Source: Octopus sinensis (Eukaryota). Taken from it: 64,000 bases of DNA. A model generated the notes under the pieces. It was given only the letters and a program-made list of their open reading frames with translations, searched no databases and had not been told where the DNA came from. The stretch covers positions 310,001-374,000 of the forward strand of contig NW_021832829.1 of the NCBI RefSeq assembly GCF_006345805.1, given 5' to 3'. Below, piece after piece: positions 7,032 to 62,799 of the stretch (positions are counted from its first letter, which is position 1; each line of letters begins with the position of its first letter). Position numbers and translations under genes: made by a program.

Positions 7032-8879
<1,848 letters not shown>

Positions 8880-11950: not shown

Positions 11951-11999
11951 TTATTTAGCGGGATTTTTCTCTTGTCCTTTCTTTAGTAATAAAATTAAA

Positions 12000-13020: not shown

Positions 13021-13102
13021 CAGAAATATATTAAAATTTGTTAGAATAAATCTTATTAATTATACCAAATTATGATTAGTTAATATAGTTAATGAAGTGG
13101 TT

Positions 13103-17800: not shown

Positions 17801-18083
17801 GCCCTAAAATACAACTTTGAGAAATTATTTATCTAATTTTTTATCATAATCAGTTTTATTTTTCAATTTTTTTGAGATCAAATAGTCTCATTCTAACTAA
17901 AACAACTTATTGGCACACCTGTAGATTAATTATATTTTGTGTTTTAACAGGGCTGGTAATTCTTTGATTAGGCAAACATAAATAAAACGTTTTTAAATAA
18001 TTTTTTCTGTTAGAAATCGGTAATATGGAAACAATTTGTTGTAATATGTGTTGTTATAATAAAATACAATATCAAGTGTTTTC

Positions 18084-18748
18084 ATGGTTACGGGATATAA
18101 ATTAAATATGGTTTTATTATAATTTTTGAGCATTGATAGGAGAGACCCGGAACTTTGTTACTGAGGTCAAATTATTCAAAATACAGTAGACCAGTACTTA
18201 ACAGAATTTGGTTGAATTCTGCTATTTATCTGCAGGCATAAAGACAGAGAACAGGAACCAAAAGATTATGAAATAGACTTCACTCTTAGAAGACCTCTAC
18301 ACAGATCGACCTATAAGAGATTTTCTGATAACCAAGATTTGTCTTTCCGGACAATTTATAATACACAATGCGAAGATGTTACTTTAGCAACTGAATGTCC
18401 CTCAAACGACACTAAAAAACTTTTTGATACACAGAATATACAATACATAAATCACCATAAGTAATGCCATCAATATACTTTTAGAAATATAAATGATCAA
18501 GAACAAATAAGACGTGAGTATAATTATTTCGAAACCAATACTGAACTACAAACTACAACATACAAAAGGGATTATACTTATGAATATGATGACAAACTAG
18601 TGAATGAGGCAGATAATGTTTGATTTTTAATCATTAATAGTTTAAAATGGATGATAAATTTTACTACAAGAAGAATACACTGCTAACTTGTGGTTCAAGT
18701 CATTTAAGAAATGGAAGAAATACATGGCAGGATTGCGACGGACTTTAG
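18084..18748 (+). CDS. CFAP95: Ciliary microtubule inner protein CFAP95 (C9orf135)-like; multi-exon, absent from the ORF track
   Basis: Manual splicing gives ERPGTLLLRSNYSKYSRPVLNRIWHKDREQEPKDYEID...STYKRF...TTTYKRDY...GRNTWQDCDGL*, colinear with CFAP95 as recalled ([29 protein letters not shown]...STYRR...NTWHDESG). Start codon inferred. Confidence 0.75.
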
Positions 18749-18954
18749 TTTCGAATGAAATTAATCAATTAATTTAATAATACTTTTAAAACAACAAATT
18801 TACTAAGTAGGCATTAAATTTTCCTTACGGAGCAGGAAATAACAATTAATAAATATCCACTCTAATTCTTAAAAATGTTGTTTTGATTTTTGGAAAAACA
18901 ATAATGCTTGCTTATGAAACTTCAATTCTTTCGCTATAAACGTGAATATTTATA

Positions 18955-19430
18955 AATTCCCACGGCACGCTGCTCTGAATGATCTCATCAGAAGAGCTTT
19001 ATAAGTCGCCGGTATCCCCTCCATACTCGAACTCACTGGGATCGATTGGGAGGACGGGAAGAGACCGGACGGGATTACTGTGTTTCCCTTCAACAGAGGA
19101 AAGCCACTAGCCTGGACTCATTCTCACCGAGAACTTGCTAATGTCCGCATCCGCCCCTGGATCAATCGCCACTACTGCCGAATGTAAAAAGATGCGGAAG
19201 TACTCTTCACTTGTGGAGAAGTACTAATTCCTCCCATTCGAGGTTGAGACGTCCGGTTCTTTGGGCGAAAAGGCAATCAGCTTCGTTCAGGAGATCGGGT
19301 CTCGGATGTCGACATTCACAGGCGACGCCCGCAAATCGAGATGGTTTTTTGAGCGGATATTCCTCGCGATAGTACGCTCGAACTCTATCTCGATGGCGTC
19401 AGCCTCTCGCCCAGTAAAGCATCAGCTCTT
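18955..19430 (+). mobile_element. CRE-like retroelement 3' fragment
   Basis: PRHAALNDLIRRAL...DGKRPDGITVFPFNRGKPLAW...RWFFERIFLAIVRSNS; frameshifted. Confidence 0.75.
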
Positions 19431-22113: not shown

Positions 22114-22930
22114 CTAAGGCCTGTGGATAAACGATGTTTGCAGTCCGTCCATCCTTGGCAAATATAAATAAATTTCTCTTCTACCTACCCTTGAGCACCC
22201 CACATACAGCTGGCCATGTGAAAAGCACTCGTTCTCTAAAAATAAGCCTACTACCTTTAAAGACTGTCCCTGGGCCTTGTTTATTGTCATAGCAAAACTT
22301 ATCTTCAGCGGAAATTGTAGTCTCTTAAATCTATCGCAGGCCCTTTCATGGTCCATAATAACGTCGACCGATTTATATATTCTTTCTCTGCCAGGGATTT
22401 TCATTAATAAATCTAAATTTATATTAAGTACCTCATCATTAAGTGGAGCTAATATAGCTCGTTCACGCAGCCAGTCGAAATTCACGTAGTGTTCAGATAG
22501 TTCGGAATAGACGGCATTCAATAATTCTTCTGCTGTTTCTACGAAAATACATAATTCTTCCGGTAGCCTAATTTTCTGGTCGTGCATTTCTGAAGTGATT
22601 GCCCCATTTCCAATATCTAGAAGGATTTGTGGGAATATGCTATTAACGCCTAGTAAATGTGGATGTACATTTACATCTAAGCTTACCTTTTTCACGTGTG
22701 TCCACAAATATGACGATTTGAGGCAGGCATTCAATTCATCCGCAGGCGTCCCTCTTTGAATAATTGGCAGCGTCTGTCTAAAATCACCTGCCAATACAAC
22801 TAATGCTCCCCCAAACAAATGGTCGCTACAATTCTTGATATCTCTATATGTTCGGTCAACTGCTTGAATGCGCCTTTATGAGCCATCGTACATTCATCCC
22901 AAACAATTAACCTAGAATGCATAATTCTAT
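22114..22930 (-). pseudogene. Helitron PIF1-like helicase C-terminal remnant
   Basis: FGGALVVLAGDFRQTLP, RAILAPLNDEV, RLQFPLKISFAMTINKAQGQSL, FSHGQLYVGCSRVG; internally deleted. Confidence 0.9.
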
Positions 22931-25720: not shown

Positions 25721-26014
25721 ATACCATTTTATTATTAAGATTTTCAGGTAGGAAATTTCTATCTTTGGTTAAAATTTTGATTGGATTCCTTTGCTCTTTG
25801 TATCAATAAAGATTCCTCTTCTATACCATTACAAATATTGATGATTTGTGTTAAATTTTTGCATAATAGTCAGCAGCATTTAACCAACTGCCCCATCTAG
25901 TTACTGGGCTCGGGTGGATATCCAATTTCTGTAAATAATTGACGTCGTGAATTATTTTTGACAAGTGCTTTGACGCACGATATTAATTTATCTACCTCTG
26001 GATAACGATTTAAT

Positions 26015-26500
26015 TTATGGCCGTGCTCCCAGACACTCCGCTATCAACGAGACTATTTCGGCTGTGTTACAAGCAGCTGGATTCCCGACAGAACTGGAAC
26101 CCGTTGGGCTTGACCGTGGAGACGGTAACGCCCAGATGGAGTCACCATTTTCCCGTGGAGTAATGGGAAATGCCTCGCGTGGGACTCCACGTGCACAGAC
26201 ACCTTCTCAAAAACAATATAGTTGACTCCGCGATCAGTCCAGGCTCAGCCGCTGAAAAGGCTGAGGTACATAAAGTTCAGAAATATCCAACCTGCTGGAC
26301 AACTTCATCTTCTCCCCAATATCCGTAGAAACCCTCCGGGGTCATGAGCCAAAAATCGTTCGAACTCGTCGGGAAAATCGGAATCTGATCTCGAGAAGAC
26401 GGAGAGAGCCTCGGGAGAAGCAATGGTTGTTCCAAAGAATATCCATTGCGATCCTGAGGGGCAACGTCTTCTCGATCATCAGTAGCTTTAGATTGTGATA
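26015..26500 (+). mobile_element. CRE-like retroelement 3' fragment nested in the hAT
   Basis: GRAPRHSAINETI...EPVGLDRGDG..PDGVTIFPWSNGKCLAWDSTCTDTF; frameshifted. Confidence 0.8.
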
Positions 26501-40993: not shown

Positions 40994-43900
40994 ATGGAGG
41001 TGGACTATTTCTCATCTGGTATTAAAACTTATTTTTTAATAATATTAAAAAATAGGCGTAGAATATATAGAAGATGGCGATGAATGTGATGAAATAACAT
41101 CAGAAGTATGGCAAGAAGCCTGCTGGATCGTGATCTCTGCATATTTCGAAGAGAAAGGCCTGGTTCGGCAACAGTTGGACTCATTTGACGAATTTATCCA
41201 AATGTCTGTCCAACGAATTGTTGAAGAGACCCCCCCGATAGAGCTCAAGGCAGAACTCCAACATAACCCAGGACAAGAAGAAAGCCAAGTAGGAGATATT
41301 CTGAGAGCATAGATTAAATATTTGGTTAAATTCGGCCAAATCTACCTTTCTCGGCCCACTCATTGGGAAAAAGAAGGAAATGCAGTGCAAATGCTTCCAA
41401 ATGAGGCAAGACTGAGAAATTTGACGTGATATTTAATATTATTAACACAAATAGATATTCAGCCCCAATCTATGTCGACATGACCAAAACATGTTACCAG
41501 GATGACGTGGAGATTAGTACGAGTACCCACACCAAGGTCTTCATTGGAAGAGTACCAATTATGCTCCGTTCTGCTTACTGTCTACTCAATAACCTATCGG
41601 CGAGGGATCTAATCGATTTAAAAGAGTGCCCCCTTGACCCAGGTGGGTACTTTATTGTGAATGGCTCGGAGAAAGTGATTATAGCCCAGGAGAAGATGGC
41701 TTCCAACAACGGTGGTCTCTTTATTTTATTCCTTAGTTTATGTGTTTCAGCAAAAGGATTCCAAATACAGTTATAAAGCGGAGGTGAGGTGTGCGGTGGA
41801 AAACTCTAACCGCCCCACGTCAACGTTGTGGGTGAACATGCTAGCCAGAGGGGGGCAGGGGACTAAAAAAAGTGTGATTGGTCAACGAATAATGGCCACT
41901 CTTCCATATGTCAAACAGGAGATCCCAATCATGGTAGTCTTCCGTGCACTGGGATTTGTTTCTGACCGAGATATACTGGAACATATCATCTATGACTTTG
42001 ATGACCCCGAAATGATGGAAATGGTTGTTTTTGCCTTAAAAGTGCAGCTCAAACCATCTTTGGACGAGGCCTTTGTCATTCAACATCAGAACGTGGCTCT
42101 CAACTTTATCGGGACTCGTGGAGCACGTCCGGGAGTCACTAAAGAGAAAAGAATTAAGTACGCCCGGGACATACTTCAAAAGGAGGTTCTTCCACATGCA
42201 GGCACATCTGAGTTTTGTGAGACCAAAAAAGCATATTTTTTGGGGTTTGCTGATAGGAGGTGATATTTAAAGGTATATTGTGCACCGACTCCTCATGTGT
42301 GCTTTGGGACGTCGTTTGTGTGATGACCGAGACCACATGGCCTTCAAACGACTAGATATGGCTGGACCCCTCCTGGCCTTTCTCTTCCGGGGTCTATTCC
42401 GTAATTTGGTGAAGGAAGTCCGCCTGTACGCTCAACGGATTATTGACCGTGGAAAGGACTTTAACGTAGAACTGGCCATAAAGACGAGAATAATCACCGA
42501 CGGACTCCGTTATTCGTTGGCGACTGGTAATTGGGGTGATCAGAAAAAAGCTCACATGGCCCGTGCTGGTGTTTCTCAAGTTTATTGGATGTCTTGAGTT
42601 TTTGTTAGGTATTGAATAGACTGACATATGTGTCCACTCTCTCACACTTGCGACGTCTTAATTCCCCTATTGGCCGTGATGGAAAACTGGCCCGTCCTCG
42701 TCAACTCCACAATACACAATGGGGGTACCTGTGTCCGGCAGAGACGCCCGAGGGGACCGCAGTTGGTCTGGTCAAGAACTTGGCTCTTATGGCTTATATC
42801 TCAGTGGGGTCTCAGCCTTATCCAATCTTGGAGTTTTTGGAAGAATGGGGGATGGAAAATTTGGAAGAGGTGTCATCACCGACGATAGTTGGAAGGTCTG
42901 TCAATTTTGTTTGAGTCTTAGTACTACGAAGGTGTTTGTAAACGGGTGTTGGGTGGGTATTCACCGTGATCCTGAACAACTAATGGTGATTCTCAGGAAA
43001 TTGAGACGTCAGACTGGAGACGTGGTGGTCTCGGAGGTATGGAGTCATGTTGAATTGTAGGTTTCCATATTACGGGACATTGAAGACAGGGAGATTAAGA
43101 TATTTTGTGACGCCGGTCGTGCATGTCGTCCGCTTCTTATTGTGGAGAACCAGAAATTATTACTAAAAAATCGCCATATCGAGGGACTCAAGCGCCAATA
43201 TGACTCACTTGGGTTGAATGTTTTGTTTTTAGTAATTAGATGGAAGGATTTTGTGTCCGAAGGAGTTGTGGAGTACATTGACTCGATAGAAGAACAGATG
43301 ACAATGATTGCAATGCATCCTGACGATTTATCCGAAGTATCCTCTTACTGTTCGTCTTACACTCATTGCGAAATACACCCGTCCATGATATTGGGAGTGT
43401 GTGCCTCCCTCATTCCCTTTCCCGACCATAACCAGGTGTTCTACATTTTCCTTTACACTTTTAGTCTCCTAGAAATACTTACCAGGCTGCCATGGGGAAG
43501 CAGGCCATGGGAGTGTACGTCACCAACTTTCACGTCAGGATGGATTCGTTAGCATTCTGTCTTTATTATCCTCAAAAACCACTCACGACGACTAGAGCTA
43601 CCGAGTTTCTAAAGTTTAGAGAACTTCCAGCTGGTTAGTTAATTTGCGAGAATTACAGGAATTAACACAATCGTGGCTATAGCTGCCTACACAGGCTACA
43701 ACCAGGAAGATTCTATAATAATGAATCAGTCGGGAGTGGACAGGGGGCTATTTAGGTGAATGGTCTTGTAAATGTCTCAGAGCAGTGTTTTATCGTTGTT
43801 ATCGTGACCAGGAAACACGACGTCCTCCATATGAGGAAGAGTGTTTCGAGAGACCAAATAGAAAGGAAGTAATCGGAATGAGACACGCAGTTTATGAAAA

Positions 43901-44984
43901 GTTGGACGAAGACGGGGTGATTGCTCCTGGGACACGTGTTTCAGGAGATGACGTAATAATTGGAAAGACGGCGACTATAAATGACAGCGATGATGAAGTT
44001 GACTATGTTTGAAAGTAATTTTTAGTTGGAGGGTGATGTCAAGCGTTTTTCTAAAAGGGATGCCTCTACGTTCTTACGGAAAACGGAAATTGGGATAGTC
44101 GACCAAGTGATGATGACAGTGAGTCAGGAGGGGTACAAATTCTGTAAAGTTCGTGTGCGAACGTGCAAAATTCCACAAATCGGGGATAAATTTGCGTCCC
44201 GACATGGACAGAAAGGGACTTGCGGAATCCAATACCGTCAGGAGGTAGGAATAAGATGGTTATTTTAGGACTTGCCGTTTACATGTGAAGGGATAACCCC
44301 TGACCTGATAATAAACCCACACGCCATCCCAAGCCGGATGACGATTGGTCATCTCATTGAATGTCTGCTGGGAAAGTTGTCTGCGTGCAGAGGGGAGATT
44401 GGGGATGCCACTCCCTTCAACGATACAATCAACGTCCAGAAAATATCGAATATGCTTAAGGACTATGGCTATCACTTGAGGGGAAATGAGGTCATGTACT
44501 GCGGATTCACGGGGCGGAAGATAAATACGCAGATTTTTATTGGTCCCACATATTACCAGAGATTGAAACATATGGTCGACGATAAAATACACGCCCGAGC
44601 TCGGGGACCAGTTCAGATTCTGACGAGGCAGCCTTTGGAAGGACGTTCGCGGTGTTGTTGGTCGGGTTACTTCTAGTGATGGTGGTCTACGATTTGGAGA
44701 AATGGAAAGGGATTGTCAAATTTCTCACGGAGCGGCACAGTTCCTCAGGGAAAGACTTTTCGAGGTGTCTGACCCCTACTACGTGGTGGTTTGTAACAAA
44801 TGTGGATTCATTGCCATCTTTTCAAAGAGTAACAAGTCACTAGAATGCAAGTCCTGTAAGAATAAGACTCAGGTAAGCTCCATTGCATGTTTCGTAGATG
44901 TCACTGATTGGAATTCCTTACGCATGTAAATTGCTATTCCAGGAGTTGATGTCAATGTCTATCGCACCCAGAATGTTGGTCTGA
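40994..44984 (+). CDS. POLR2B: RNA polymerase II second-largest subunit; about 20 short introns
   Basis: [107 protein letters not shown]. Confidence 0.98.
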
Positions 44985-46319: not shown

Positions 46320-46625
46320 ACACTAACCAGAACCGGCTGACAGGATTAAGAGACAATTCCTGAATAAGAAATGTAAATTTTCTGAGATCTTTAGAACAAT
46401 GGGTGCGCAAATGGCCAAGTTTCTTTAAATGAGCAAGAGTTTGGGTACCGAAAACACAGGACGTCTCTACGGCAATTGCCCAGAATCAAAAGCATTTGCA
46501 CAAATGACAGTACTTCGACAAGTTCATAGATTCGATTTTCTTAGCCAACAAACCGGGTCGACAAGCAGTTGAATTCAAGGTCCCCTTGGCGAAAGGGTCA
46601 GCACAGCTAATGTCCCAAACAAGCT
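46320..46625 (-). mobile_element. CRE-like 3' fragment
   Basis: Minus frame LVWDISCADPF...AIAVETSCVFG. Confidence 0.65.
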
Positions 46626-46629
46626 GTTT

Positions 46630-47201
46630 CTCAGATTCAAATGCGAATACCGTGCTCTAATCGGGACGTGTTGCTTTTTAAAAGTCAAGATCTGTCGGTT
46701 CCAGAACTGAAAGGAAACCTGCTCTTCCATGGGGGGAAAAGAGAAATTCATTTAATCGAAGTGGGAGTTACCTCGCAAGACCGTTTAAAGCAAGTTGAAG
46801 TGGAGAAATTTCACAAATACGACCTCTTTGCAAACGAACTGTCGGTTCTCTATGAAGCAAAAGTGAAGATTATTCCAATTGTCTTGACATGGGATGGAGT
46901 TGTCTCAAAGTTCTTTAAAAGTCATATGGACAAGTTATCCATTGAAGAAGGAACGAGGACATACATCCAGTCTGTTGTGCTAAAGAGTACGCAAGAGAGT
47001 ATGCTTATCGAGCACAGACATGGGATGAAGGTAGACAACGAGGAGAACGCCTCTGCCGCCAATCAACTTGCGGAGCTGGCATGTCGTGAGGACACTCAAT
47101 TGAATAAATTCATTGACGCAGAAATAGAGAATGAAAGAAAGTTTATGGAAAACTCTTCTTCCAAGCGAAGAAGAGAAATCATTGAAGATCTGGATTTTTA
47201 A
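46630..47201 (+). mobile_element. R4/Dong-like RLE retroelement C-terminal fragment
   Basis: IHLIEVGVTSQDRLKQVEVEKFHKYDLFANEL...VKIIPIVLTWDGVVSK...YIQSVVLK. Confidence 0.75.
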
Positions 47202-47758: not shown

Positions 47759-48493
47759 ATGACTACTCAGATCGACCGTGCAAAGGCTGCTTTTAGCACA
47801 CTTCTCGGGGAAATCAACCATTCAGAGGAACTTCCGGTATTCATGGCATGGCTGGACTATAAGTTGGCCGAGTTTGACATTTGCGGTCATATCACCCTTG
47901 ACTGTTATTGACCTTTCAGACTACATTTAGGCCATCAAGAACTCCCCGCGTGGATGTCTTCAGTCCTGAGAATCTTTATGGACAAAAAACTGGACTCAAT
48001 TTTTCCTATTCAAGTTCAGACTAAAAAACTGGACTCAATTTTCCCCAGTCAAGTTCAGACTAATTTTCCACTCTTAAACACCGAGGAATGTAATTTTGTT
48101 TTATTCTCAATTTGAGTAGTTACTTCTTCACTCTCAATAAAACCTTCTGACTCGCTTGGTACAACTCCAGTGAAGAAATCGAGGAATTCTACTCCTGCAA
48201 AAAGTCCTAAAGTTAAGAAAGAAGATATCCCAACAAAATCAGTACATGTGGATTCTCCTAACAAAAACCCGGGTTTTGTGTTTTATTTATCTTGTTCAGT
48301 AACAAAAACAGAGACTTTTCATTATTGCACTGTGTGTGATTATCGTTCCAAGTCAAAATCGGATGCTGCAAAGCATATTCGAACACATACTGGAGAGAAG
48401 CCTTATTCCTGCAGATTTATGTGTGGCCAGGCTTTTTCAAGATCAGACAAGCGTAACGATCATGAGAAAAAGCATCATTCTAGTCCTCAATGA
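47759..48493 (+). CDS. C2H2 zinc-finger protein (two fingers); multi-exon, upstream exons inferred
   Basis: [50 protein letters not shown]; upstream in-frame 39-bp duplication encoding [13 protein letters not shown] twice. Confidence 0.8.
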
Positions 48494-48529
48494 TTTTTCT
48501 TTTATATTTCTCTTTTTATTGGTCATGTA

Positions 48530-48932
48530 CTTTGCCTCAAATGTTATAAATATTTAATGGATATCGACCAAGAAAACCAAATAGTCATTTACGAGTGCTT
48601 TTTAGGGACAGGAATTCCCACCTATGTCGCCTCAAACAAAAATCCCAAAATGTTTGTTCTTGAATCTCCATACCTCAGTATCCCCTACTTAACACAGCGT
48701 CAAAACCCTATCTTCCTAGGGTCCTCATCCTTCTTCTACTCAAGTATCACTTCCGTACAGATCAGTAGATTGTCAAAGTATACTTTTCTATTCAAATCTT
48801 TTGCGGAGCAATCTTGAAGATTCAAGTACGCGTCTTCTCAAGCTTTTAAAAAATAAAATTGATGCCAATCCCATTGCAGATCACCTCCAATATCATCCCA
48901 AATACCTGCAAAAATTTTGGGTCAACAATTAA
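48530..48932 (+). pseudogene. Intronless alpha/beta hydrolase pseudogene, bacterial-like
   Basis: ENQIVIYECFLGTGIPTYVASNKNPKMFVLESPYLSI (degenerate GxSxG region); after a frameshift PYLPRVLILLLLKYHFRTDQ*IVKV..IQIFCG, then DSSTRLLKLLKNKID...HLQYHPKY; no introns. Confidence 0.75.
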
Positions 48933-48974
48933 TCAAAAATCCTTTAGTTTAATCTTATTTTTAAGGGGAGAATT

Positions 48975-50622
48975 ATGAACAACTTACTTCCAGAAACAAA
49001 TGATGAAGAACCTTTTATCCTCTATATCAGGGGTCGGCAAATACTTTTGGAGAAGAGCCAATTTTGAACATTTTTGGAAATTTCGAAAAATTGAAGAGCC
49101 ACCTTTTACCACTTGTCAAAAATTTAAATTCATAAAATTAAATAGACATTAATTTAAAAAATAATTAAGAATTCATTTTAAAAAATTAAATTAATCAGAC
49201 GCATTAATGAGAAATGTGATTCCTCATTTCTTTGATGAGTTGGTTAATGTCTGGGTCGTAAGTCGTTAATTTTAATCTGAGGTTAGATTCCAAATTCGAA
49301 TCTGTAATTTTGTTCCTTAATTTAGATTTTATATAATTCATATAAGAAAAACTTTGTTCACACATATAAGTGGACCCGAATATTGTCAAAATTCCGTATG
49401 CAAATTTTTTTAATTCATAATAAGAATCTGGAAGAGAATTCAAGTTTCGAAAATCACATCTTCAAGTTTCTTTTGTATAACATTAATATCATTTTTAATT
49501 TTACCAGACAATGTTTCTGTTTCAAGTAATTCTGAAAGGCGAATAAATTTTGATGCCCATAATTCCTTGCATGTCAAGTCCAATAGCTGCATTTCGAACT
49601 CAGCTGCGTTGATTTCAAAGTTCTTCAGAGGTTTTAATGAAACATGCCTTTATAAATTCGCCATCGGTAAATGGTTTTCCCCTTTTTGCGATCTCGTGGC
49701 TTGTCAAAAAACTGGCAATATTTGCAGTCCTGGCATTGTGATACCAATATTTAAAAGCGGAATTCTCAATCTGATTATTCTTTGCAAGTTTTTCTACAGC
49801 TTTCTTTCGGGAATCACTAATTGGATATTTTTTTGCGAAATTTGAGTGTTTTGTGTTAGAGTGTCTCTCTAAATTTGACTTTTTATTTTGATTCAAAGTT
49901 TCCTGGCAAATGAGACATTTCGGTAGTTGTTCTGAATTAGACGTGAATGTAAAAATTTCAGTCCATTTTGATTGAAAATGTCGCCCATTATCGATTTTTT
50001 TATTAATTTTTTTATTGCTAGGCATATATCGATGTACCACAAAAAATTAATGTTAAACGTGCAAAGATTTTTTGTTATTAACAAAACAAAAAAAATAGTT
50101 AAAAATTAAAATCATTTATTAAAAAAATAGTTAAAAATTGAAAGAGCCTACCGTAAGATTTAAAGAGCCTTCAAAGGCTCGCGAGCCTGCTTTTGCCGAC
50201 CCCTGCTCTATATCAAAGAAGCTCAAATAGAAGAGACAAACATCACCATCGATGACATCTCAGTTGAAGACTACCCTTCTTTCCTCAGCTCTCCAGCAAA
50301 AACGAAAGGATGCAAAGTTCGGAGAATCAGGCTAAAGAACAAAAAGAGCTATTAAAAGAGTGTCAAACTGTTTGGGAATCATGAAACCATCTTGCCTTTA
50401 CCAGTAAAAATCAACTCCTCAATGGTACCTGTAAAATGCATTGTTGAGCTCGATGATATACTCTCTCTAAACTTTCCTTCTTTTGGTACTTTAATCTTGG
50501 GAGACTGGGAATGGCGAGAGAACAATGAAAAGTTGGAAATTGCACAAAAAACAAAGGAATTTCCTTAAGAAGTTTTGCAAACAGGTCAACGCATAGAAAA
50601 AGCTCGAAAACTTCGGGTCTGA
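48975..50622 (+). pseudogene. Hypothetical bacterial-like gene interrupted by a hAT insertion and two in-frame stops
   Basis: AAGGGGAG SD-like motif just before ATG 48975; removing 49028-50205 plus one TSD copy restores one frame MNNLLPETNDEEPFILY|IKEAQIEET...KSY*KSVKLFG...EFP*EVLQTGQRIEKARKLRV*. Confidence 0.6.
49028..50205 (-). mobile_element. Internally deleted hAT (GTF2IRD2/SPIN-like)
   Basis: TIRs CAGGGGTCGGCAAA and TTTGCCGACCCCTG; 8-bp TSD CTCTATAT (49020-49027, 50206-50213); remnants PKCLICQE...NLERH and IFGSTYMCEQSFS. Confidence 0.92.
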
Positions 50623-50669
50623 TTGTTTGCTTCTTATCACAAACAGCTTTATCTAGCTTAGGATGCATT

Positions 50670-50954
50670 TTGATCATAAACCATCAGCGCTTGCGGCAAC
50701 TCCTGCAAGTGCCAAAGACATGACAGATCAGAAGGGCTGGCAATTTTTCCATATGATTCAGTCGAAGGCGAGTGCCTTTTGAATTCAGCTATTAAAGTAA
50801 GTCTAGGAGACTTTAACGCTTTTTTAAAAACTCGTTCTAAAGGGCGTCCTTCTTTCATGATTTTTTGAATGCTCTCCGAATCATGCATTTCAATTTCATC
50901 TACTTTGCTATGTTTATGAGCGATGATTTTCTTTAATTTTTTTTTTTTGAGCAA
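50670..50954 (-). pseudogene. trpC: Truncated indole-3-glycerol phosphate synthase (N-terminal part)
   Basis: LKKIIAHKHSKV...FKKALKSPRLTLIAEFKRHSPS matches the IGPS N-terminus and IAE.K..SPS motif; frameshift before LALAGVAAS; the rest is missing. Confidence 0.8.
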
Positions 50955-51014
50955 ATAAGTTTTAATGGATTTTTAGAAACAGAGAATAAGATATCCACGG
51001 ATTTATAAAGAGCC

Positions 51015-51240
51015 TGGAGGTCAGCTCAAAGTCGCCGCACTGCGTATCGAGTGGCAGTTTCCGCGGAGCACCGCGACCGAGATTCGCTGGAAGAGCCAGC
51101 TCGTCTCCCTCCGGTCGTTGGTCTTCCTGGCAATTTTGCTGGCAATGTCGGCAAGAAGGCGAGTCGCAGACCTGCCGACGATTCCAGATGTTTCAAAGGC
51201 GAGGGGGACAAACTCGTAAGAGTCCGAATTTTCTTTAATT
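51015..51240 (-). mobile_element. CRE-like 3' fragment inserted in the bacterial-like island
   Basis: Minus frame PLAFETSGIVGRSATRLLADIASKIARKTNDRRETSWLFQRISVAVLRGN. Confidence 0.8.
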
Positions 51241-51245
51241 AGGTT

Positions 51246-51628
51246 TCATTTTTTAATAATCTCTAGCGATTTTCCTTCTAGTTGTGCCTTTCGAGCTTTT
51301 TCAATTCTTTCTTCGATTATCTCAGCTAAATTATAAACATAAATTGCTATTCCTGCATTAAGGGTCAAGTATCTGCAATAGGTTATGCCCCAAGTGCTTC
51401 TAAAAAGCCTGGAATTGATCACAAAATTTCCACCTTCTAAGCTTCTTTTGTGCAAGTTTTAAAACCACATTTTGCTGGGTCTGGCTCAAAGCGAATCTTT
51501 TCTTCAACAACATCAAAAACTCCGACAGGTGTGAGTTCATTCATCCCTTGACAGTAAAAGAGAATCGATTTCTTCGTTTTAAGTTTAAAAAAATAGGCAA
51601 GTAAATCAAGTACTTCTTCACTTATCAT
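51246..51628 (-). pseudogene. Frameshifted intronless hypothetical gene
   Basis: Overlapping ORFs 51437-51628 and 51246-51455 look like one gene split by a frameshift; no recognised family. Confidence 0.4.
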
Positions 51629-51744
51629 TTATAGCAGGTGAAAAGGAGGCTTAGTTAACTTAAGAAGTAAATCAATAAAGCTAAAGAGCATACAAATCTC
51701 TAGCTCGTTACAAACCGCTGCACCTCTCTAAAAGCCCGATAATA

Positions 51745-52200
51745 ATAAGAGACAAATATGAACTTAATGCTTATTCCATTGATTGCTTGAACCACTTTTT
51801 CGGGAAATAACTACATCACTCCTACTGAGATGAGACAATCTACGCTGCGAATCCACCTCAGAAAACCTCTTAATGAGGCTCGACCAGCATTGGCTCGCCT
51901 GTTTACTCTCTGCTGCTGTGCAACACAGCGAGTCATGGCTGAAAGTTATGCCAAATGCTGGCCTCGAAACATTATAAGAAGATGGCATACGCATCGGTAA
52001 TACACTGATAGTCGGACTTGACGTCTGCGAACAACATCGCTGCAGATGTCGAAAAATGGTCGACTTTATAGGTGTCCACCCACTCTCTTGCAAACGAAGT
52101 GTTGGCCGAGCTCTTAGACACTTCGCAGTTATTTTACGAAATCTTGAGTCAGCGGGATTTCCCTCGGTGCTAGAGACAGTGGCGATAGAAAAGGACCCAA
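51745..52200 (-). mobile_element. CRE-like fragment (CCHC/RLE region), rearranged
   Basis: DGIRIG...GLDVCEQHRCRCRKMVDFIGVHPLSCKRSVGR in an alternative minus frame. Confidence 0.65.
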
Positions 52201-52254
52201 TGGGATAACACCTTTCCTTACTTTTTTTTCATAACAGAAGAAAATATGAAAGGC

Positions 52255-54045
52255 GAAAGTTATGTGCCAGCGGCAAGGACGCAGTGTGCGTTGCCGCGAA
52301 CGATGGCCAGACCGATGCGCTGGGGGAACAAGAGGCCCTCTCTCGGATCCTTAAGCCTCATCCCAATGGACTGCCCGACCTAGTAGAACAAGTCGGTCTC
52401 CTTTCCCGCGGCTCCAGCGGTCTTCAGGGCGATTGGCGTAAAGCGGTAGCAATCCGCGAGAGAAGAATACTTTTTGAATTTCATCCTTTCGGCGTGGTTT
52501 GCAGCCGAACAAGGGTTCGCAGCGGAAGAATGGATCCTCGACTTTGAGAAAGTATCCACAACGGTAACATCCCATACCAGGGCTTTCCCGGACGAGTACG
52601 GGAATATTGTCACCCCGTCAGGCTTTTTGCCGTTTCCCCGATCGAGTCCGACCGGTTCGAGGAGGCACGAATGGCCCGATTTGAGACCGGCCTTCACGAT
52701 TCCATTGAGGGCCTTGTGTCTGTGTTCCCTGCCTGCGCTCCTCTTGCAGGAAAGTGGGTGTAGTTTCTTTTCGTCAACGTCCTCTCGCATCTGCAGCGGT
52801 GTTTTACGCAAACATCCAGGCCAAGACGGTAAGCAACTCCGATGCGATTGGCAGCATCGTCTAGCCACGTCCCGATACTGGAGAGAGGGAGAGCATTCAG
52901 CCAGCTGCCAGAGTGAGCCGCACCTCCGAATCTCAGTGGGAGCGAGCATTGGGCCCATCCCGGAGCATCGAGGTGGACGTTGAGGACGGATTCAGCAGCT
53001 TTTTTCAGAATGGCGTCGTATGCAAGGAGTAGATCCATTTGCGAGAAATAAAGATTGCTTCCGAGGGTGAAGATAAGTTTCGGCAGATGGATGCTGTTCT
53101 TCAGGAGGAAAAAGGCAGTGGGTGAGTCCAGGATAGATAGGTTGGTTAAAAGTCTTTGAAAGTATTCGGTTTTGGCAGAAAGCATGCATCGGAGCTTTGT
53201 GTCGGACAGGGATTTCCCGAGGAAGGTGACGTCATCGATTGGGGTAACGTTGGCGCCAGGCAGGATTACTCTGAGGCGGGCCACAGCGGATTGGAAGTCC
53301 GCCTCCGAACAGGAGACATTGATGATCTCGATCTTCTTCGCGTTGACCGATAGGCCGAGGGTAGCAAGTGCTGGTAAGATGTGTTCTACATCCCAAATAA
53401 CGTGGTCAGCACGGCCACCCAATGTGGCATCATCAAGATACCATAGATTGAATGGAGAGACAGCAAGTCGAGCTGCCTCATCGATTGTCATCGCGAAGAG
53501 AAGTGGCCCTAGCGGGTCACCCTGTTGCACGCCAGTCTCCGAACGGATGATCTCATTCCCGTATACCAGACTGCTCTCCGAACCGTAGGCAAGCGAGACA
53601 AGATGGATTATTTCTGGTGCTCTCCGAAAATGGCATCACGGCGCACGCTGTTGAAAGCGTTGATGATATCAAGCTTCACATCGATAAAATCGGCAGTAAC
53701 ACGTTGGCCCATGTAGAAGAAACCCCTGTTGGCATGAACAGCTCCTTCACAGCCGCCACGTACGCCAACACCGACTTTCGTGGGCGAAAGCTCGGCCCCT
53801 ATTCTCGTTGCAACCCTTCTGGCAGCGACTTTGCTGCAGAGCCTTCTGAAGTAGTTGCCAACCCCAATTGGGCAGACACCTCCGTCTGGTTTTTGAAAAG
53901 CGTGAAGGTGGGCAGCGAAAAAGAGATTCCTCGCGAAGAGGGGGATCCTTCCGTCGATGATCCTTCCGACCAGTTTGGTGATTGAACTCAAGAGCCGGAT
54001 TCCCCGGTGATCGCTGAAGTCACGAAGAAGATATTTGGCTGAAGC
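52255..54045 (-). mobile_element. CRE-like non-LTR retrotransposon, 5'-truncated and frameshifted
   Basis: KPDGGVCPIGVGNYFRRLCSK, GVGVRGGCEGAVHA, LDIINAFNSVRRD, QQGDPLGPLLF, WYLDD, KKPDGVTIFPY..GKALVWDVT. Confidence 0.9.
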
Positions 54046-54589: not shown

Positions 54590-57500
54590 ATAAATCAATT
54601 ATTTAAAGTATGAGCCTCGGATAGCGTGTGAATTTCCGCGGACAATTGCACACGAAATCCTCTGGAAGAGCCACGACGTCTCCCGCGGATCACCTGTTTT
54701 TTTGGAGATTAGACCACCCAATCTTCGAATGAACGAAAAACTCTCTGTTCCAAAGACTCCAGAAGTCTCACAGCGATCGGCTGGAAAGATATCTGTCTGC
54801 CAGGAAGAGTATTTTTTTTTCTTCAACTCTTCAGAACGTTTTGCAGCAGAGCCAGGAAAGGATGCCGAACTTCCGAATGAAGAAGGTCCAAACGTGTCAG
54901 GGCAGGTAAAATCCCAAACAAGTGATTTCCCTCTCGTGTACGGGTAGATGGTTACGCCGTCTGGGCGTTTGCCATCCCCTCTATCGAGACCAGCTGGTTC
55001 GAGTTGAGAGTGGAAACCGGCAGCGTCCATGGCCCTTTTAATGATGTCATTGGCGGCGGAATGTCGGGGAAAACGACCGGCACTACGAGTGCAAGAAAGT
55101 GGGTGCCTTCCCAATGGACCAATCCTCTTTCCACATTTGCAGGGGTGTGGGGTGCACATCGGTAAGCCGAGACGTAGACATAGGCCGATCCTAATGGTAT
55201 CGTCGTCCAGTTTACAGCCCGTAGACGCAATAGGACAAGCGCTTATCCAGGAGCCAGAATTGGGTTGTGCACCCGATCTGAGACATATGATCCGTTCTTG
55301 GTCCATGCACAGTTCGATAACTCTGTAAGTCTCCCTGCACCAGATTTCGTCCCAATGTCTCTGTGAAGATTCCTCTTCGGGGAGTCTCAGACCATGACTG
55401 CTCCATGACTCGAGGCCGTTTTGCATCCACCGACACGGGGTACATTCATTTAAAGACTTGAGAATGACGCCGATGAGGGGACCACAAAATGATCGTGAGG
55501 CCAAATAGGCTGGAAGAGCCAAGTCGGTAGGTGAACGGAGACCGATACCTCCCATACGAATAGGTAGGGAAGCTTGTTTCCATGCGAGATCATCAAGTTG
55601 CACATTACAAATAAGTTCGGCATGACGACGAATGATAGAGTCTATTGACCCAAGATGTTTAGGATGAAGGAAACATGGAGATGAACGGAGGATATACAGA
55701 ATTTTTGGAATGGATAAAAAATTCTTCAAGAGGAACAAGCCTTCATGTGCATCTAGCTGGGATAACCGACTCGCTGCTTGTTCCATATTTGATGTCTTTT
55801 CCATCCAAATTTTTTTCCGTTGCCTGACCGTGGAGAGGAGAGCCGAGAATAATAAGGTCTTCTTTTTGGGTTATTCTGATTTCAGGAATGAGTGAGGTAA
55901 AGTTTCTGTGGATTTCATCGAAAGAGGCCACGTTAAGATTAGTCAGCTCACACTTTGACGGATTCAAGGATAACCCGATGTGGCCGAGCCGAGAGGATAT
56001 CATAAGGGCGTCTTTGAGAACCTGATCTGCCGGGCCACCGATTGTGACATCGTCCAGTACCAAATGTTTAGGGAGATTTGACTGACATTGCTATAGGGTG
56101 ATACCCAATGCGAATAGGAGTGGTCCGAGAGATCACCCTGTTGTACCCGGTGGAAGAGAGAATACTTGAACCCTCGAAAAGGAGGCTGGAACTGTGCTCG
56201 TAACAAAGTTTAGCGAACGGCATGATTTCAGGTACTGAGTCATACACTCTCCAAGGAAACAGGAACGGTCGATCGAATTGAACGCATTTCGCATGTCAAT
56301 TTTCAAGATGACACAATTGTCAGGCACATTCTTGGAAGCAATAACTCTCTGACTGAATGGGCTGATGCTTCACAACCTCCTCTGACACCGACACCCAATT
56401 GGATGTTTTAAAGATGCTTGGGTAGGAATGGGAGCTACGACTGCATAATTTTTGGCTGCAAGGCGTCTAAAAGTGCACCCAACAGAAATCGGTCTAATTC
56501 CGCCGTCCTTTTTATTAGGGCGGTGAGGCTTCCAGACATGAAGAGAAACGTGCGAAATCAGATATGGCCACTGATGAAAAGGGTCATCAGGTCGCATATT
56601 GAATCAATTAGGTTACACCTGCATCAGACGAATTGAGTGATAAAAGGTCGCGAATGTGACCGGGACGAAGGCCGTCTAACCCTCCAATACTGGAGGGTCG
56701 GAATGATTTGAGATTATAAAGGAGCTCTTCTTTGCTCACTTTTTAACTTCGGTAAAATGAGAACGAGAAAGGAATTCTAGATCATTTTTAACGTCGGGAT
56801 GTTTTTCCTTAACAGCTCGAGAGTCCTGTCCCCAATAGAGGCAAATGAGTCGTTACTGCAAAGAATTCTTAGAGCGGCAGTGAAGTCACCTTCCAATAGT
56901 TTGGAATGGATTCTTTTACTGAAATTGCATTCGGAGGTGTTATTCGATGTTTTGGAAAAAACATATTTCTGGGAAAGAAAAAAGGAAATACAGTCCGACC
57001 CCCAAATGGGGCACCAAGTGCCCCAAAATGCGGGGGTGCCCAAAAACAGGGGTTTGTTATTTTTTTAAAAATTAAACCATTAATAAACATCAAAAAACAT
57101 TTTTACTAAAATATTCAGTTATTTTTCTTTATTTGTAGAGTTTTGTCTGATATTGTTCGTCAATTTCAGCCGAAAATCAAAAAAATCTCGGAGCATACTT
57201 GGTGCAACATTAGAAATTTTTTTTTCTAAATTGTTAAGCAGATCTTTTGTTTTTGCTACGACATTTTCACTATTTTCGGTTTCTGAATATGTATCATAAA
57301 CATTATTGTTCATGTCTTCGCATTCTCCATCAGTATTGCCGTGTTGCAAGAAAGGTACAATATTTCGTTTTATTCTTGATATTGTTCCTTTACTTGTGTT
57401 GTACTTTTTCATTAGTTGCCTCTCAGATAAATTTTTCTTCAAAATTTCTTTAGCAATCTTCAATTTAGTTTCGTAATCCATAACCACAACAATAAAAATA

Positions 57501-61009: not shown

Positions 61010-61410
61010 CCCGCCTCGCGAATAGCGAAGCCATTCCCGCTGATCACAGCGATCTACAGACGTTCAAAAGCCAGGATGACTCTCTGGAATCGTGTCTTAC
61101 TTTAGATATCCGTCGGCCGAGGGAAGCGGAGCGTCCTGGGGTTGAAGATTCTTGAAGACTCTAAAGCGATTGGGGTGAAAAGGAGAGAATTCGAGAGGTG
61201 CCCGTACTTGAGAATCTTGCGATACTTGATTAGCCTCGAAACGTGCCCAGAATTGATGGCGGACAGGGCGAGATTTCCGCGCGAAAACGTGTCAGAGGAG
61301 TCCCAAATAAAGGATTTTCCCTGCTCATAACGAAAGGTGGTCATGCCGTCTGGGCGTTTGCTGTCTCCTCGGTCCAGCCCAACCGGCTCGAGGATCGACG
61401 GGAAACTGTA
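61010..61410 (-). mobile_element. CRE-like 3' fragment
   Basis: EPVGLDRGDSKRPDGMTTFRYEQGKSFIWD...TPIALESS. Confidence 0.8.
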
Positions 61411-61419
61411 AAGTAACTT

Positions 61420-62799
61420 TTTTATTATAATAAAAAACCAAAAGAGAAATAGTCATTGGCAGATAGCCAGAGTATTGCCTCTGACTATTGCTATAGATAT
61501 TCTTTCGATTAAATACCGGTGCTCACACGGGTCGCCGGTAACCCTTTCGATTAATGAGGCAATGCGCTGGAGTAGGGTCCGAGTAGAAGGCCCCTGTATT
61601 CCTGACGTCTCAACAGCCAGGGGGACAAACACTCTCCCATTCCGAATTCCAGCGTATTTCTCAGCTTTTCTCTTCTCTGCCCGTTCAGACGGGGCTCCAG
61701 GATTCTCGATGCATAATTTGATGTTCTGATTGGAGAAGGAGTTCACACACGTGACGTCCCAAACCAGACACTTTCCCCTCTGAAATGGAAATGTGGTCAT
61801 CCCATCGGGTCTTCTGCCGTCCTCTACGAAAATCCCTGCAGGTTCCAATTGTGTGTGGAATCCAGCAGTTCGAAGAGATCGACAGATGATCTGGTTCAGT
61901 TCGGAATGCCGTGAGGAACGTCCAATTCCGTTTCGACATGAGAGGGAGTGATATCCATACTCGTCAGTCCACATGCCGCACCGGCATTGATGTTTTTCAT
62001 AGACGCGTAAACCGAGGCGCAGACAAACTCCAATTCTTACGGTTTCATCATTAAGAAGGCAGCCAGTTGTATTACAAGGGTAACAGTTTAGCCACGCGCC
62101 GCTTAGGGGCTGGCTGCCCGCTTGTAAACAAGCCAACCTTCTCTGGTCCATGGTTTCCTTTAGGCATGAAAACGTATTGGCGTGGACTTTCGACGTCCAC
62201 TCCGATTGGCAGGTCACATCAGATGGCAATGGAAATCCCAGCTTTTCCCATACGGCGACGCAATCATCCACAGCAAATGATTTCCTCTGTTCGTTTATTT
62301 GAAAAAGAACAGTGTCGATCATATCTCTGGACGAGAGTACTGAGGAAAAATATGCGCCGTGCGCTGAATCTGCCGGGGTGATCAAGCCGATCCCTCCCAG
62401 GGAAATTGGAAGAGTCGCCTGTCTCCACGACTGCGTATCGAAGCTAACTTTGAGGATATCCTCAGTGCAAGCTCTCATATGCTCGGAATAGTCTTCAAGA
62501 AGATCTGTTTCCTGATAGCATTGGGCCGTCCTCAAAAGGTATGTTAACTTCGGAATAGATAGACAGTTCCTCATTAAAAAGAGCCCAATGTGGCTATCCA
62601 CACAACGTAATTTTTTAGAGAGAAGGGAAAATTCCGAAATTTTAGTCTTCATAACAGCTTTGATACCACTTTCAAAAATAGAAGATCCAAGAAAAATCAA
62701 GTCCTCTTTGAGGGGGAAGGTGCATCCAGGTAGCAGTTTGTCGAATTCGGTCATCCACTTCCGAAAGGAAAGTTCGTTCGTGTTGACATTCACAATGTC
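61420..62799 (-). mobile_element. 5'-truncated CRE-like retrotransposon with an uninterrupted 446-aa ORF (61453-62793)
   Basis: SIPKLTYLLR, QATLPISLGGIG, CRCG...HSLSC...RH, RRPDGMTTFPF..GKCLVWDVTC; candidate 9-bp TSD AAGTAACTT (61411-61419, 62800-62808). Confidence 0.9.

What the first reader, a model, noticed from the sequence alone, without database searches (positions are those of the whole stretch)
48520..51720. Decaying bacterial gene island (alpha/beta hydrolase, trpC, hypotheticals) in an animal chromosome
Four closely packed reading frames here have no introns, whereas neighbouring host genes are interrupted every ~100-200 bp. One has an SD-like AAGGGGAG before its ATG. One is the N-terminus of indole-3-glycerol phosphate synthase (LIAEFKRHSPS); animals lack tryptophan biosynthesis. 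All carry stops, frameshifts or deletions. The island starts within ~60 bp of the host zinc-finger stop codon. The best explanation is a horizontally acquired chunk of a bacterial, probably intracellular symbiont, genome now pseudogenising. A Chlamydiae-like donor is my guess from sequence style only.
Basis: partly seen in the sequence, partly recalled or inferred. Interest (0 to 1): 0.8.

Follow-up and report, generated by a model that had tools for sequence, protein, structure and literature searches.

The report
Dead chlamydial DNA in dicyemid genome
A 3.3-kb stretch holds about 1.8 kb of dead, shrunken DNA from a chlamydia-like (Simkaniaceae-type) bacterium, built into the chromosome of a tiny animal that is most likely a dicyemid kidney parasite of octopus whose DNA was filed under Octopus sinensis; it has no function, but it records a past infection of the germ line.

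Summary
Window 48530-51822 contains about 1.8 kb of bacterial DNA. It matches, at 76-91% DNA identity (BLAST) and in the same order, a 10.6-kb segment of one uncultured bacterial contig (JGI Ga0180434_10000199).

The pieces, in order, are: the C-terminal half of an alpha/beta hydrolase, the start of a 260-aa hypothetical, the middle of a 450-aa hypothetical, the tail of DAHP synthase, the start of trpC, and the C-terminal 60% of trpD. Three internal deletions (3.8, 0.9 and 3.9 kb) removed the rest.

- **Decay:** it looks neutral. There are 22 frameshifting indels and 5 new stops. Changed codons are 149 nonsynonymous against 35 synonymous. There are 22 deletions against 2 insertions, and GC-to-AT changes are three times as common as the reverse.
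- **Integration:** two host transposons with intact target-site duplications lie inside the bacterial DNA. This is therefore real integration, not contamination.
- **Donor:** all eight trp-operon proteins of the donor relative are closest to a Simkaniaceae (Chlamydiota) genome.
- **Host:** the window is 100% identical to an Octopus sinensis assembly contig. However, its RPB2 gene has 24-29-nt introns, which among animals are known only in dicyemids and myxobolid myxozoans. The host is therefore most likely a Dicyema parasite.

This is a new member of a known kind and has no function.

The parts
48170..48493 (+). Left flank: last coding part of a host C2H2 zinc-finger gene (stop at 48491-48493). 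It contains a candidate 27-nt in-frame GT-AG intron at 48273-48299.
   Evidence: Pfam zf-C2H2 and zf-H2C2_2. The sequence was read. The intron is my reading only and was not tested.
48530..48925 (+). Relic of an alpha/beta hydrolase gene, donor residues 126-271 of 271. It has 8 frameshifting indels and 1 new stop.
   Evidence: blastn 81% identity to L001 19980-19444. The edge was set by alignment. The donor gene carries Abhydrolase_1 and Hydrolase_4.
48965..49027 (+). Shine-Dalgarno-like AAGGGGAG (48965-48972) and the ATG at 48976: first part of a donor 260-aa hypothetical gene (residues 1-51 together with 50214-50311).
   Evidence: Aligns with L001 AAGGAGAG plus the ATG of the 260-aa gene.
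49028..50205 (-). Host hAT-type DNA transposon, internally deleted (1,178 bp). It has 14-bp terminal inverted repeats, CAGGGGTCGGCAAA / TTTGCCGACCCCTG. The 8-bp target-site duplication CTCTATAT lies at 49020-49027 and 50206-50213.
   Evidence: Inverted repeat I2. Pfam Dimer_Tnp_hAT at E 2e-4, with weak zf-BED. After removing the element, the flanks align without a break to L001.
50214..50311 (+). Continuation of the 260-aa gene relic after the hAT element. It ends at a 3.8-kb deletion junction.
   Evidence: blastn 86% identity to L001 19449-19346.
50308..50602 (+). Relic of a donor 450-aa hypothetical gene, residues 284-397. It has 1 frameshifting 41-bp deletion and 2 new stops. It ends at a 0.9-kb deletion junction.
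   Evidence: blastn 76% identity to L001 15557-15219; counts.
50603..50717 (-). Relic of the DAHP synthase gene at the end of the donor trp operon, residues 283-322 of 339. It has 2 frameshifts. It ends at a 3.9-kb deletion junction that removed trpA, trpB, trpF and most of trpC.
   Evidence: blastn 91% identity to L001 14284-14168. There is a weak NCBIfam DAHP synthase match. Counts.
50714..50938 (-). trpC (indole-3-glycerol phosphate synthase) N-terminal relic, residues about 4-79 of 259. The ATG and first codons lie at 51249-51241, on the other side of the retroelement. It has 3 frameshifts and 1 stop.
   Evidence: Pfam IGPS and NCBIfam TrpC. 71% amino-acid identity to P0002. blastn 86% identity. 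Counts.
50939..51227 (-). 5'-truncated tail of a host non-LTR retrotransposon. Its poly(A) appears as a T-run at 50939-50949. The 13-bp target-site duplication ATTTTCTTTAATT lies at 50926-50938 and 51228-51240.
   Evidence: Direct repeat D15. tblastn 51% identity to the C-terminus of the window's 401-aa retroelement ORF, E 1.8e-12. The empty site aligns without a break to L001.
51241..51822 (-). trpD (anthranilate phosphoribosyltransferase) relic, residues 127-330 of 330. It has 8 frameshifting indels and 1 stop. The start of trpC overlaps its end.
   Evidence: Pfam Glycos_transf_3 at 1.2e-7 and TIGR01245 trpD at 2.6e-8. 66% amino-acid identity to P0001. blastn 83% identity. Edge.
51834..52193 (+). 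Right flank: fragment of the same host non-LTR retrotransposon superfamily, abutting the truncated end of trpD.
   Evidence: tblastn to the window's retroelement ORFs, E 4e-20.
41058..44981 (+). Host marker gene RPB2, 3.5 kb upstream of the relic. At least 11 GT-AG introns of 24-29 nt were resolved.
   Evidence: tblastn with a mollusc RPB2, followed by splice-site fitting.

Best explanation
**What it is.** A fragment of at least 10.6 kb from the chromosome of an intracellular Simkaniaceae-like chlamydia was inserted into the nuclear germ-line DNA of a short-intron animal. The animal is most likely a Dicyema mesozoan living in the kidney of Octopus sinensis. The insertion lies in the gap just downstream of a zinc-finger gene.

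**What happened after insertion.** The DNA was never functional in the host and has drifted.
- Three large deletions and about 22 small ones shrank it to 1.8 kb.
- Substitutions accumulated without regard to codon position and with a GC-to-AT bias.
- A hAT transposon and a truncated LINE later landed inside it.

**What remains.** The scars of six donor genes, in donor order: hydrolase, hyp260, hyp450, DAHP synthase, trpC, trpD.

**Shown here:** bacterial origin, colinearity, decay, transposon insertions and eukaryotic flanks.

**Inferred:** how the DNA entered (lysis of the bacterium in a germ-line cell and end-joining into a break), the dicyemid identity of the host, and the family-level placement of the donor.
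For: **Donor match.** P0001 (TrpD) and P0002 (TrpC) are 66% and 71% identical to the conceptual translations and lie on one 93.6-kb metagenome contig. Six colinear blastn matches show 76-91% identity.

**Neutral decay.**
- Differences per codon position are 15.4%, 10.7% and 9.7%.
- 149 nonsynonymous against 35 synonymous codon changes.
- 22 frameshifting indels and 5 new stops.
- 22 deletions against 2 insertions.
- 143 GC-to-AT changes against 46 AT-to-GC changes.
- GC content is 36% in the relic against 41.5% in the donor relative.

**Integration.**
- The hAT element has an 8-bp target-site duplication and the LINE tail a 13-bp one, both inside the bacterial DNA.
- The reconstructed empty sites align without a break to L001.
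- The LINE family has at least 12 other fragments in the window.
- The flanks encode C2H2, RT, PIF1, kinase, haspin and TBC domains.

**Donor taxon.**
- The best named TrpD relatives are Simkaniaceae MAGs.
- A Simkaniaceae MAG has the same trpEGDCFBA-DAHPS order.
- It is the closest match for all 8 operon proteins: 48-73% identity, against 55% or less for other phyla.
- L001 also carries a TrpR equivalog and a 570-aa ankyrin-repeat protein.

**Host.**
- The window is 100% identical to O. sinensis contig VCDQ01000828.1.
- RPB2 introns are 24-29 nt.
- The best RPB2 hits are metazoan.
- D. japonicum lives in O. sinensis. Its genome has 36.7% GC, 49% repeats rich in LINE ORF2, a mean intron of 38 bp and a mean exon of 198 bp (PMC6736024).
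- Introns under 30 nt are known among animals only in Dicyema and myxobolids (PMC13644364).
Against: - No read-level evidence was available, so junctions and depth rest on one long-read assembly.
- No dicyemid reference sequence could be compared, so the host assignment is by exclusion.
- The donor's family rests on one operon, which could itself have moved between bacteria. No ribosomal or core marker of the L001 organism was available.
- A scan of GTDB species genomes with TrpD found nothing above 45% identity.
- The donor relative is known from a single environmental metagenome whose sample description I could not retrieve.
Confidence: 0.85

Rival explanations
1. Assembly chimera or contamination: reads from a living bacterium in the sample were wrongly joined into a eukaryotic contig.
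For: The assembly evidently contains DNA from more than one organism, so mixed samples are a real risk. No reads were available to check this.
Against: - A living bacterium would not carry 22 frameshifts, 5 stops and three deletions that collapse 10.6 kb to 1.8 kb.
- It would not carry a eukaryotic hAT element and a polyadenylated LINE tail with clean target-site duplications inside its genes.
- Its base composition would not have shifted towards that of the host.
Confidence: 0.03
2. The host is the octopus itself: the contig is genuine Octopus sinensis nuclear DNA, as labelled, and the transfer went into a cephalopod.
For: - The contig is part of GCA_006345805.1.
- NCBI annotated a gene model on it as an Octopus protein, XP_029655719.1.
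- Window GC of 36.9% does not separate the two candidates.
Against: - RPB2 spans only 3.9 kb, with at least 11 introns of 24-29 nt. Such introns are reported among animals only for Dicyema and myxobolids.
- The NCBI model is a mis-spliced fusion of kinase and RPB2 exons. This is what one would expect if an octopus-trained gene predictor met ultra-short introns.
- Exon and repeat statistics fit D. japonicum.
Confidence: 0.08
3. Functional horizontal gene transfer: one or more of the frames (for example the ATG at 48976 with its Shine-Dalgarno-like site, or trpC/trpD) is an expressed, domesticated gene.
For: An ATG with an upstream purine-rich motif survives at 48976, and the hyp260 piece has no frameshift over 51 codons.
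Against: - That frame is split by a 1.18-kb transposon and then runs, across a deletion junction, into an unrelated gene fragment that carries stops.
- Every other piece has frameshifts or stops.
- The nonsynonymous to synonymous ratio is about 4:1, which is neutral.
- No intact domain remains, and a search with the fused frame found nothing.
Confidence: 0.02
4. The relic is a secondary copy: it is one of several copies that were moved or duplicated within the host genome (for example with neighbouring transposons), so this locus is not the original integration site.
For: The relic sits in a transposon-rich stretch, its right end abuts a LINE fragment, and its left end lies 37 bp from a gene end. 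Only 64 kb of the host genome could be inspected.
Against: No second copy of any L001-like sequence is present elsewhere in the window. The colinear order with the donor is simplest to explain by a single insertion followed by deletions.
Confidence: 0.1

Closest known systems
Wolbachia-to-host nuclear insertions in insects and filarial nematodes (from my own knowledge: Dunning Hotopp et al. 2007 and later work)
   Same: DNA of an intracellular bacterium is integrated in the nuclear genome of its animal host. It is mostly non-functional, fragmented, decaying and invaded by host transposons.
   Different: The donor here is a chlamydia (Simkaniaceae-like), not an alphaproteobacterium. The host is most likely a dicyemid. 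The relic is small (1.8 kb left of at least 10.6 kb), and no living symbiont is known in this host.
Mitochondrial and plastid DNA fragments in nuclear genomes (NUMTs, NUPTs)
   Same: The presumed mechanism is the same: organelle or endosymbiont DNA is captured at chromosome breaks, then undergoes neutral decay, deletion bias and transposon insertion.
   Different: The donor is a bacterium, not an organelle, so the event is rare rather than continuous.
Functional bacterial genes acquired by animals (for example in bdelloid rotifers; from my own knowledge)
   Same: The coding sequence is of bacterial origin and is embedded between animal genes.
   Different: Those genes are intact, expressed and often have acquired introns. 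Here every piece is broken, and no selection is detectable.
trp operon of Simkaniaceae MAG GCA_026708385.1 (L017) and of contig Ga0180434_10000199 (L001)
   Same: Gene order is trpE-G-D-C-F-B-A followed by DAHP synthase. The relic keeps trpD, then trpC, then the DAHP synthase tail in that order and orientation.
   Different: The relic lacks trpR, trpE, trpG, the first 126 residues of trpD, most of trpC, and all of trpF, trpB and trpA. L001 has a TrpR gene upstream, which was not seen in the part of L017 that I could read.

Membership tests
Bacterium-to-animal nuclear DNA insertion (non-functional relic) | The sequence is of bacterial origin | tested here: met
   76-91% DNA identity, colinear, to an intact bacterial operon region. 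trpC and trpD profiles match.
Bacterium-to-animal nuclear DNA insertion (non-functional relic) | It is physically continuous with host nuclear DNA on both sides | tested here: met
   The same contig carries a C2H2 gene 37 bp to the left and a LINE fragment to the right. Two host transposons with target-site duplications lie inside it. This holds at assembly level only.
Bacterium-to-animal nuclear DNA insertion (non-functional relic) | The junctions are supported by spanning reads and by even depth | not testable with these tools
   No read data were available.
Bacterium-to-animal nuclear DNA insertion (non-functional relic) | It evolves neutrally (pseudogenes) | tested here: met
   22 frameshifting indels and 5 stops. 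149 nonsynonymous against 35 synonymous codon changes. No excess of change at third codon positions.
Functional horizontally transferred gene | An intact open reading frame under purifying selection | tested here: not met
   All six pieces are truncated, and five carry frameshifts or stops.
Donor: Chlamydiota, Simkaniaceae-like | The closest named relatives of the donor genes are Simkaniaceae | tested here: met
   TrpD shows 56% and 50% identity to Simkaniaceae MAG proteins. All 8 operon proteins are closest to L017.
Donor: Chlamydiota, Simkaniaceae-like | Placement of the donor-like organism by ribosomal or core-genome markers | not testable with these tools
   Only about 22 kb of the 93.6-kb contig could be read. 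It holds no marker genes, and its clusters carry no names.
hAT DNA transposon | An 8-bp target-site duplication, short terminal inverted repeats, and a hAT dimerisation domain | tested here: met
   Target-site duplication CTCTATAT, 14-bp inverted repeats, and Dimer_Tnp_hAT at E 2e-4, exactly at the Pfam cut-off. The catalytic core is absent, so the copy is non-autonomous.
Non-LTR retrotransposon, 5'-truncated copy | A poly(A) tail, a variable-length target-site duplication, and homology to the 3' end of an ORF2 | tested here: met
   An 11-nt A-run, a 13-bp target-site duplication, and 51% identity to the ORF C-terminus of a full element in the window.
Host: Dicyemida | Spliceosomal introns mostly under 30 nt in a metazoan genome | tested here: met
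   11 RPB2 introns of 24-29 nt. The RPB2 best hits are metazoan. The rule comes from the literature.
Host: Dicyemida | Sequence match to a dicyemid reference genome or transcriptome | not testable with these tools
No dicyemid RPB2 appeared in the protein search.

The most novel reading that the evidence does not exclude
Dicyemid mesozoans carry, or once carried, a Simkaniaceae-like chlamydial endosymbiont with access to their germ-line (axoblast) cells. This relic would be the first recorded bacterium-to-dicyemid DNA transfer, and one of very few chlamydia-to-animal nuclear insertions. The neutral pattern of differences implies that the donor was almost the same organism as an uncultured bacterium so far seen in a single environmental metagenome. 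That points to a living reservoir that could be looked for in cephalopod kidneys.
Probability: 0.5. Interest if true: 0.6.

Novelty: new member of a known kind. Interest (0 to 1): 0.45.

Why it matters
- **A molecular fossil of an infection.** The relic records an intracellular infection in one of the simplest and least-studied animal groups. No bacterial partner or gene transfer is reported for this group in the searchable literature.
- **A testable lead.** It can be followed up with FISH or 16S on dicyemids and octopus renal sacs, and by screening the D. japonicum genome for more relics.
- **A view of genome decay.** It is a clean natural example of how a fast-shrinking animal genome erodes neutral DNA: a deletion bias of 22 to 2, and 83% of the inserted length lost.
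- **A database problem.** It exposes a 651-kb contig filed as Octopus sinensis, with at least one RefSeq protein on it, that is probably parasite DNA.

Tried and rejected
- **The fused 'hypothetical' frame.** A search with it found nothing. The reason emerged later: it is a deletion-made fusion of pieces of two donor genes. I rejected the weak NCBIfam match of this frame to 4-alpha-glucanotransferase, because the DNA aligns to the donor's 450-aa gene. I also rejected the weak Pfam hits TFIIE_beta and T7_gp14 as chance.
- **My own first reading of the trpD/trpC boundary.** I first read a trpD stop overlapping a trpC start as ATGA. The donor shows a 16-nt overlap instead, and the LINE sits inside the first codons of trpC.
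- **Search for closer donors.** A GTDB genome scan with TrpD gave 45% identity or less, with no chlamydiae recovered by the 8-residue patterns. A metagenome scan with TrpC found no contig closer than L001.
- **Names for the donor.** Cluster look-ups of ten L001 proteins gave no names.
- **Neighbouring gene.** The 450-aa gene of L001 and the 452-aa gene next to the Simkaniaceae operon are not homologous.
- **Exact-product look-ups.** Look-ups of two window ORFs, meant to find independent assemblies of the host, found nothing.
- **Sample description.** The description of JGI sample 3300017991 could not be recovered from papers.
- **RNA genes.** Rfam and tRNA scans of the window were empty.
- **More donor DNA in the window.** No donor-like DNA lies outside 48530-51822 in the window.
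Full report
**What is in the sequence**

Reading 47800-52400 and listing ORFs shows short bacterial-looking frames on both strands between a C2H2 zinc-finger ORF (stop at 48491-48493) and a GC-richer retroelement block starting near 51.8 kb. Two features inside the interval are not bacterial.

- **A hAT transposon.** This 1,178-bp element (49028-50205) has 14-bp terminal inverted repeats, CAGGGGTCGGCAAA / TTTGCCGACCCCTG, and an 8-bp target-site duplication, CTCTATAT (coordinates checked). Its minus-strand ORFs match the hAT dimerisation domain, and weakly BED-type zinc fingers.
- **A retroelement tail.** This 289-bp segment (50939-51227) is bounded by a 13-bp direct repeat, ATTTTCTTTAATT, and starts with a T-run, which is a poly(A) on the minus strand. 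Its translation is 51% identical to the C-terminus of a 401-aa retroelement ORF elsewhere in the window (E 1.8e-12). That family has at least 12 fragments across the window.

**Confirmation that the rest is bacterial**

I removed the two elements and bridged frameshifts with X. The conceptual peptides then match IGPS/TrpC (profile positions 1-63) and TrpD (positions 160-325 of 330).

A protein search with the TrpD and TrpC pieces returned exactly two hits: a 330-aa TrpD (66% identity) and a 259-aa TrpC (71% identity). Both are on the same 93.6-kb metagenome contig, JGI 3300017991 Ga0180434_10000199.

In the 20.8 kb of that contig that I could read (L001), the genes run as follows:
- plus strand: trpR, trpE, trpG, trpD, trpC, trpF, trpB, trpA, DAHP synthase;
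- minus strand: genes of 147, 82 and 450 aa;
- plus strand: an ankyrin gene;
- minus strand: genes of 570 and 260 aa, then a 271-aa alpha/beta hydrolase.

**Colinearity at DNA level**

blastn of the window against L001 gives six matches, all in one orientation and in order:

| Window | L001 | Identity | Content |
|---|---|---|---|
| 48534-49027 | 19980-19444 | 81% | hydrolase, start of the 260-aa gene |
| 50208-50311 | 19449-19346 | 86% | 260-aa gene, continued |
| 50308-50602 | 15557-15219 | 76% | 450-aa gene |
| 50603-50717 | 14284-14168 | 91% | DAHP synthase tail |
| 50714-50937 | 10235-10012 | 86% | trpC start |
| 51228-51812 | 10023-9412 | 83% | trpD |

- The first and second matches meet across the hAT element, overlapping by roughly the target-site duplication. 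The last two meet across the retroelement tail in the same way.
- With the elements removed, the window aligns to L001 without a break over both sites.
- The other three junctions are deletions of about 3.8, 0.9 and 3.9 kb.
- Edge alignments place the relic at about 48530-51822.
- Nothing else in the window resembles L001.

This explains why a search with that frame found nothing.

**State of decay**

- In aligned columns the relic is 87-92% identical to L001.
- Differences are spread over codon positions 1, 2 and 3 at 15.4%, 10.7% and 9.7%.
- Changed codons are 149 nonsynonymous against 35 synonymous.
- There are 22 frameshifting indels and 5 new in-frame stops.
- Small deletions outnumber insertions 22 to 2.
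- GC-to-AT changes outnumber the reverse 143 to 46. GC content is 36% in the relic against 41.5% in the matching donor DNA.

Differences between two living bacterial species would be concentrated at synonymous sites, and here they are not. So almost all of the divergence is neutral decay in the host, and the true donor must have been very close to the L001 organism. That last step is an inference.

**Why this is not contamination or a chimera**

A living bacterium would not carry these lesions, a eukaryotic DNA transposon, or a polyadenylated retroelement tail with clean target-site duplications inside its genes. The flanks on the same contig encode C2H2, reverse transcriptase, PIF1-like helicase, protein kinase, haspin and TBC domains. 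Read-level support could not be checked.

**Who the donor was**

- A scan of GTDB species genomes with TrpD found only distant relatives, at 45% identity or less. A metagenome scan with TrpC found nothing closer than L001 itself.
- An exhaustive HMMER search with TrpD, followed by a name look-up, showed that the best named relatives are two 'Simkaniaceae bacterium' MAG proteins, at 56% and 50% identity.
- One of these MAGs (GCA_026708385.1, L017) has trpE-G-D-C-F-B-A followed by DAHP synthase in the same order.
- That MAG is the closest of 14 available genomes for all eight operon proteins. Identity is 48-73%, against 55% or less for Clostridia, Verrucomicrobiota, Coxiellaceae and others.
- L001 also has a TrpR equivalog and a 570-aa ankyrin-repeat protein, which fits an intracellular lifestyle.

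Family-level placement rests on one operon and should be treated as provisional.

**Who the host is**

- A protein search with RPB2 exons from the window gave as best hit an Octopus sinensis RefSeq model, XP_029655719.1.
- Its locus is 100% identical to window 30166-52263. The window is therefore part of contig VCDQ01000828.1 (651,711 bp) of assembly GCA_006345805.1.
- The RPB2 gene here spans only 41058-44981. At least 11 GT-AG introns of 24-29 nt could be fitted.
- The next-best RPB2 hits are metazoan, at 77-78% identity (bivalve molluscs, then birds and mammals). Non-animal hits are at 56-62%.
- According to PMC13644364, introns under 30 nt are known among animals only in myxobolid myxozoans and in Dicyema japonicum.
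- According to PMC6736024, D. japonicum was collected from Octopus sinensis. Its genome has 36.7% GC, 48.9% repeats with many LINE ORF2 copies, a mean intron of 38 bp and a mean exon of 198 bp. The window has 36.9% GC, many LINE fragments and exons of 100-400 bp.

The most likely reading is that this contig is dicyemid DNA co-assembled with the octopus, and that the RefSeq model, a fusion of kinase and RPB2 exons, is a mis-prediction. A direct comparison with the dicyemid genome (RDEW00000000) could not be run.

**How it most likely came about (inferred)**

A chlamydial cell lysed inside a germ-line cell of the host, and a piece of its chromosome of at least 10.6 kb was joined into a break downstream of the zinc-finger gene. 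With no function, it then lost 83% of its length to deletions, drifted towards AT, and was hit by a hAT element and a LINE. Its right end is now bounded by another LINE fragment, so the original insert may have been longer.

**Novelty and value**

Transfer of endosymbiont DNA into animal nuclei is well known for Wolbachia (my own knowledge). This is another member of that kind, with an unusual donor and host. Full-text searches found no paper linking dicyemids with lateral gene transfer, and none at all holding 'Dicyema' together with 'lateral gene transfer'. The two papers that mention both dicyemids and intracellular bacteria concern placozoans and the immunity of simple animals, judging by their titles and abstracts; I did not read them. 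The listed results of a wider search held no paper mentioning dicyemids alongside chlamydiae. The relic has no function, so interest is moderate. Its value lies in being a fossil of an unrecognised symbiosis, a clean example of deletion-driven erosion, and a flag for mislabelled sequence in a public assembly.

Noticed in passing
window 30166-52263 (and by extension 1-64000): The window is 100% identical to Octopus sinensis assembly GCA_006345805.1, contig VCDQ01000828.1 (651,711 bp). Its gene structure, however, is dicyemid-like. The contig and RefSeq protein XP_029655719.1 (a fusion of kinase and RPB2 exons) are probably parasite sequence filed as octopus.
   Followed up: partly
window 41058-44981, + strand: A complete RPB2 gene packed into 3.9 kb, with at least 11 GT-AG introns of 24-29 nt. 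These are among the shortest intron lengths reported for animals.
   Followed up: yes
window 572-842, 6124-6862, 17586-17774, 18921-19398, 25995-26489, 46339-46755, 51834-52193, 52278-53323, 54602-55870, 61015-61428, 61456-62793: At least a dozen fragments or copies of one non-LTR retrotransposon superfamily share a conserved C-terminal domain that Pfam does not recognise (no hit for the 401-aa ORF).
   Followed up: partly
window 22114-22818, - strand: An ORF with a PIF1-like helicase domain (E 4.7e-15), possibly a Helitron remnant.
   Followed up: no
window 48273-48299: A candidate 27-nt in-frame GT-AG intron inside the zinc-finger ORF directly left of the relic. If real, it would tie the relic to the short-intron genome within about 250 bp.
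   Followed up: no
L001 (Ga0180434_10000199) 6687-14340 and 16973-18685: The donor-like bacterium has a full trpR-trpEGDCFBA-DAHP synthase operon and a 570-aa ankyrin-repeat protein. Its proteins occur only in one JGI metagenome and in the ENA and Logan copies of it. No close relative turned up in the pattern-based scan of GTDB species genomes or in the JGI metagenome scan.
   Followed up: partly
P0166: A Chromera velia TrpD is among the closest relatives (52% identity) of the chlamydial TrpD. This may be another case of a chlamydia-type trp gene in a eukaryote.
   Followed up: no
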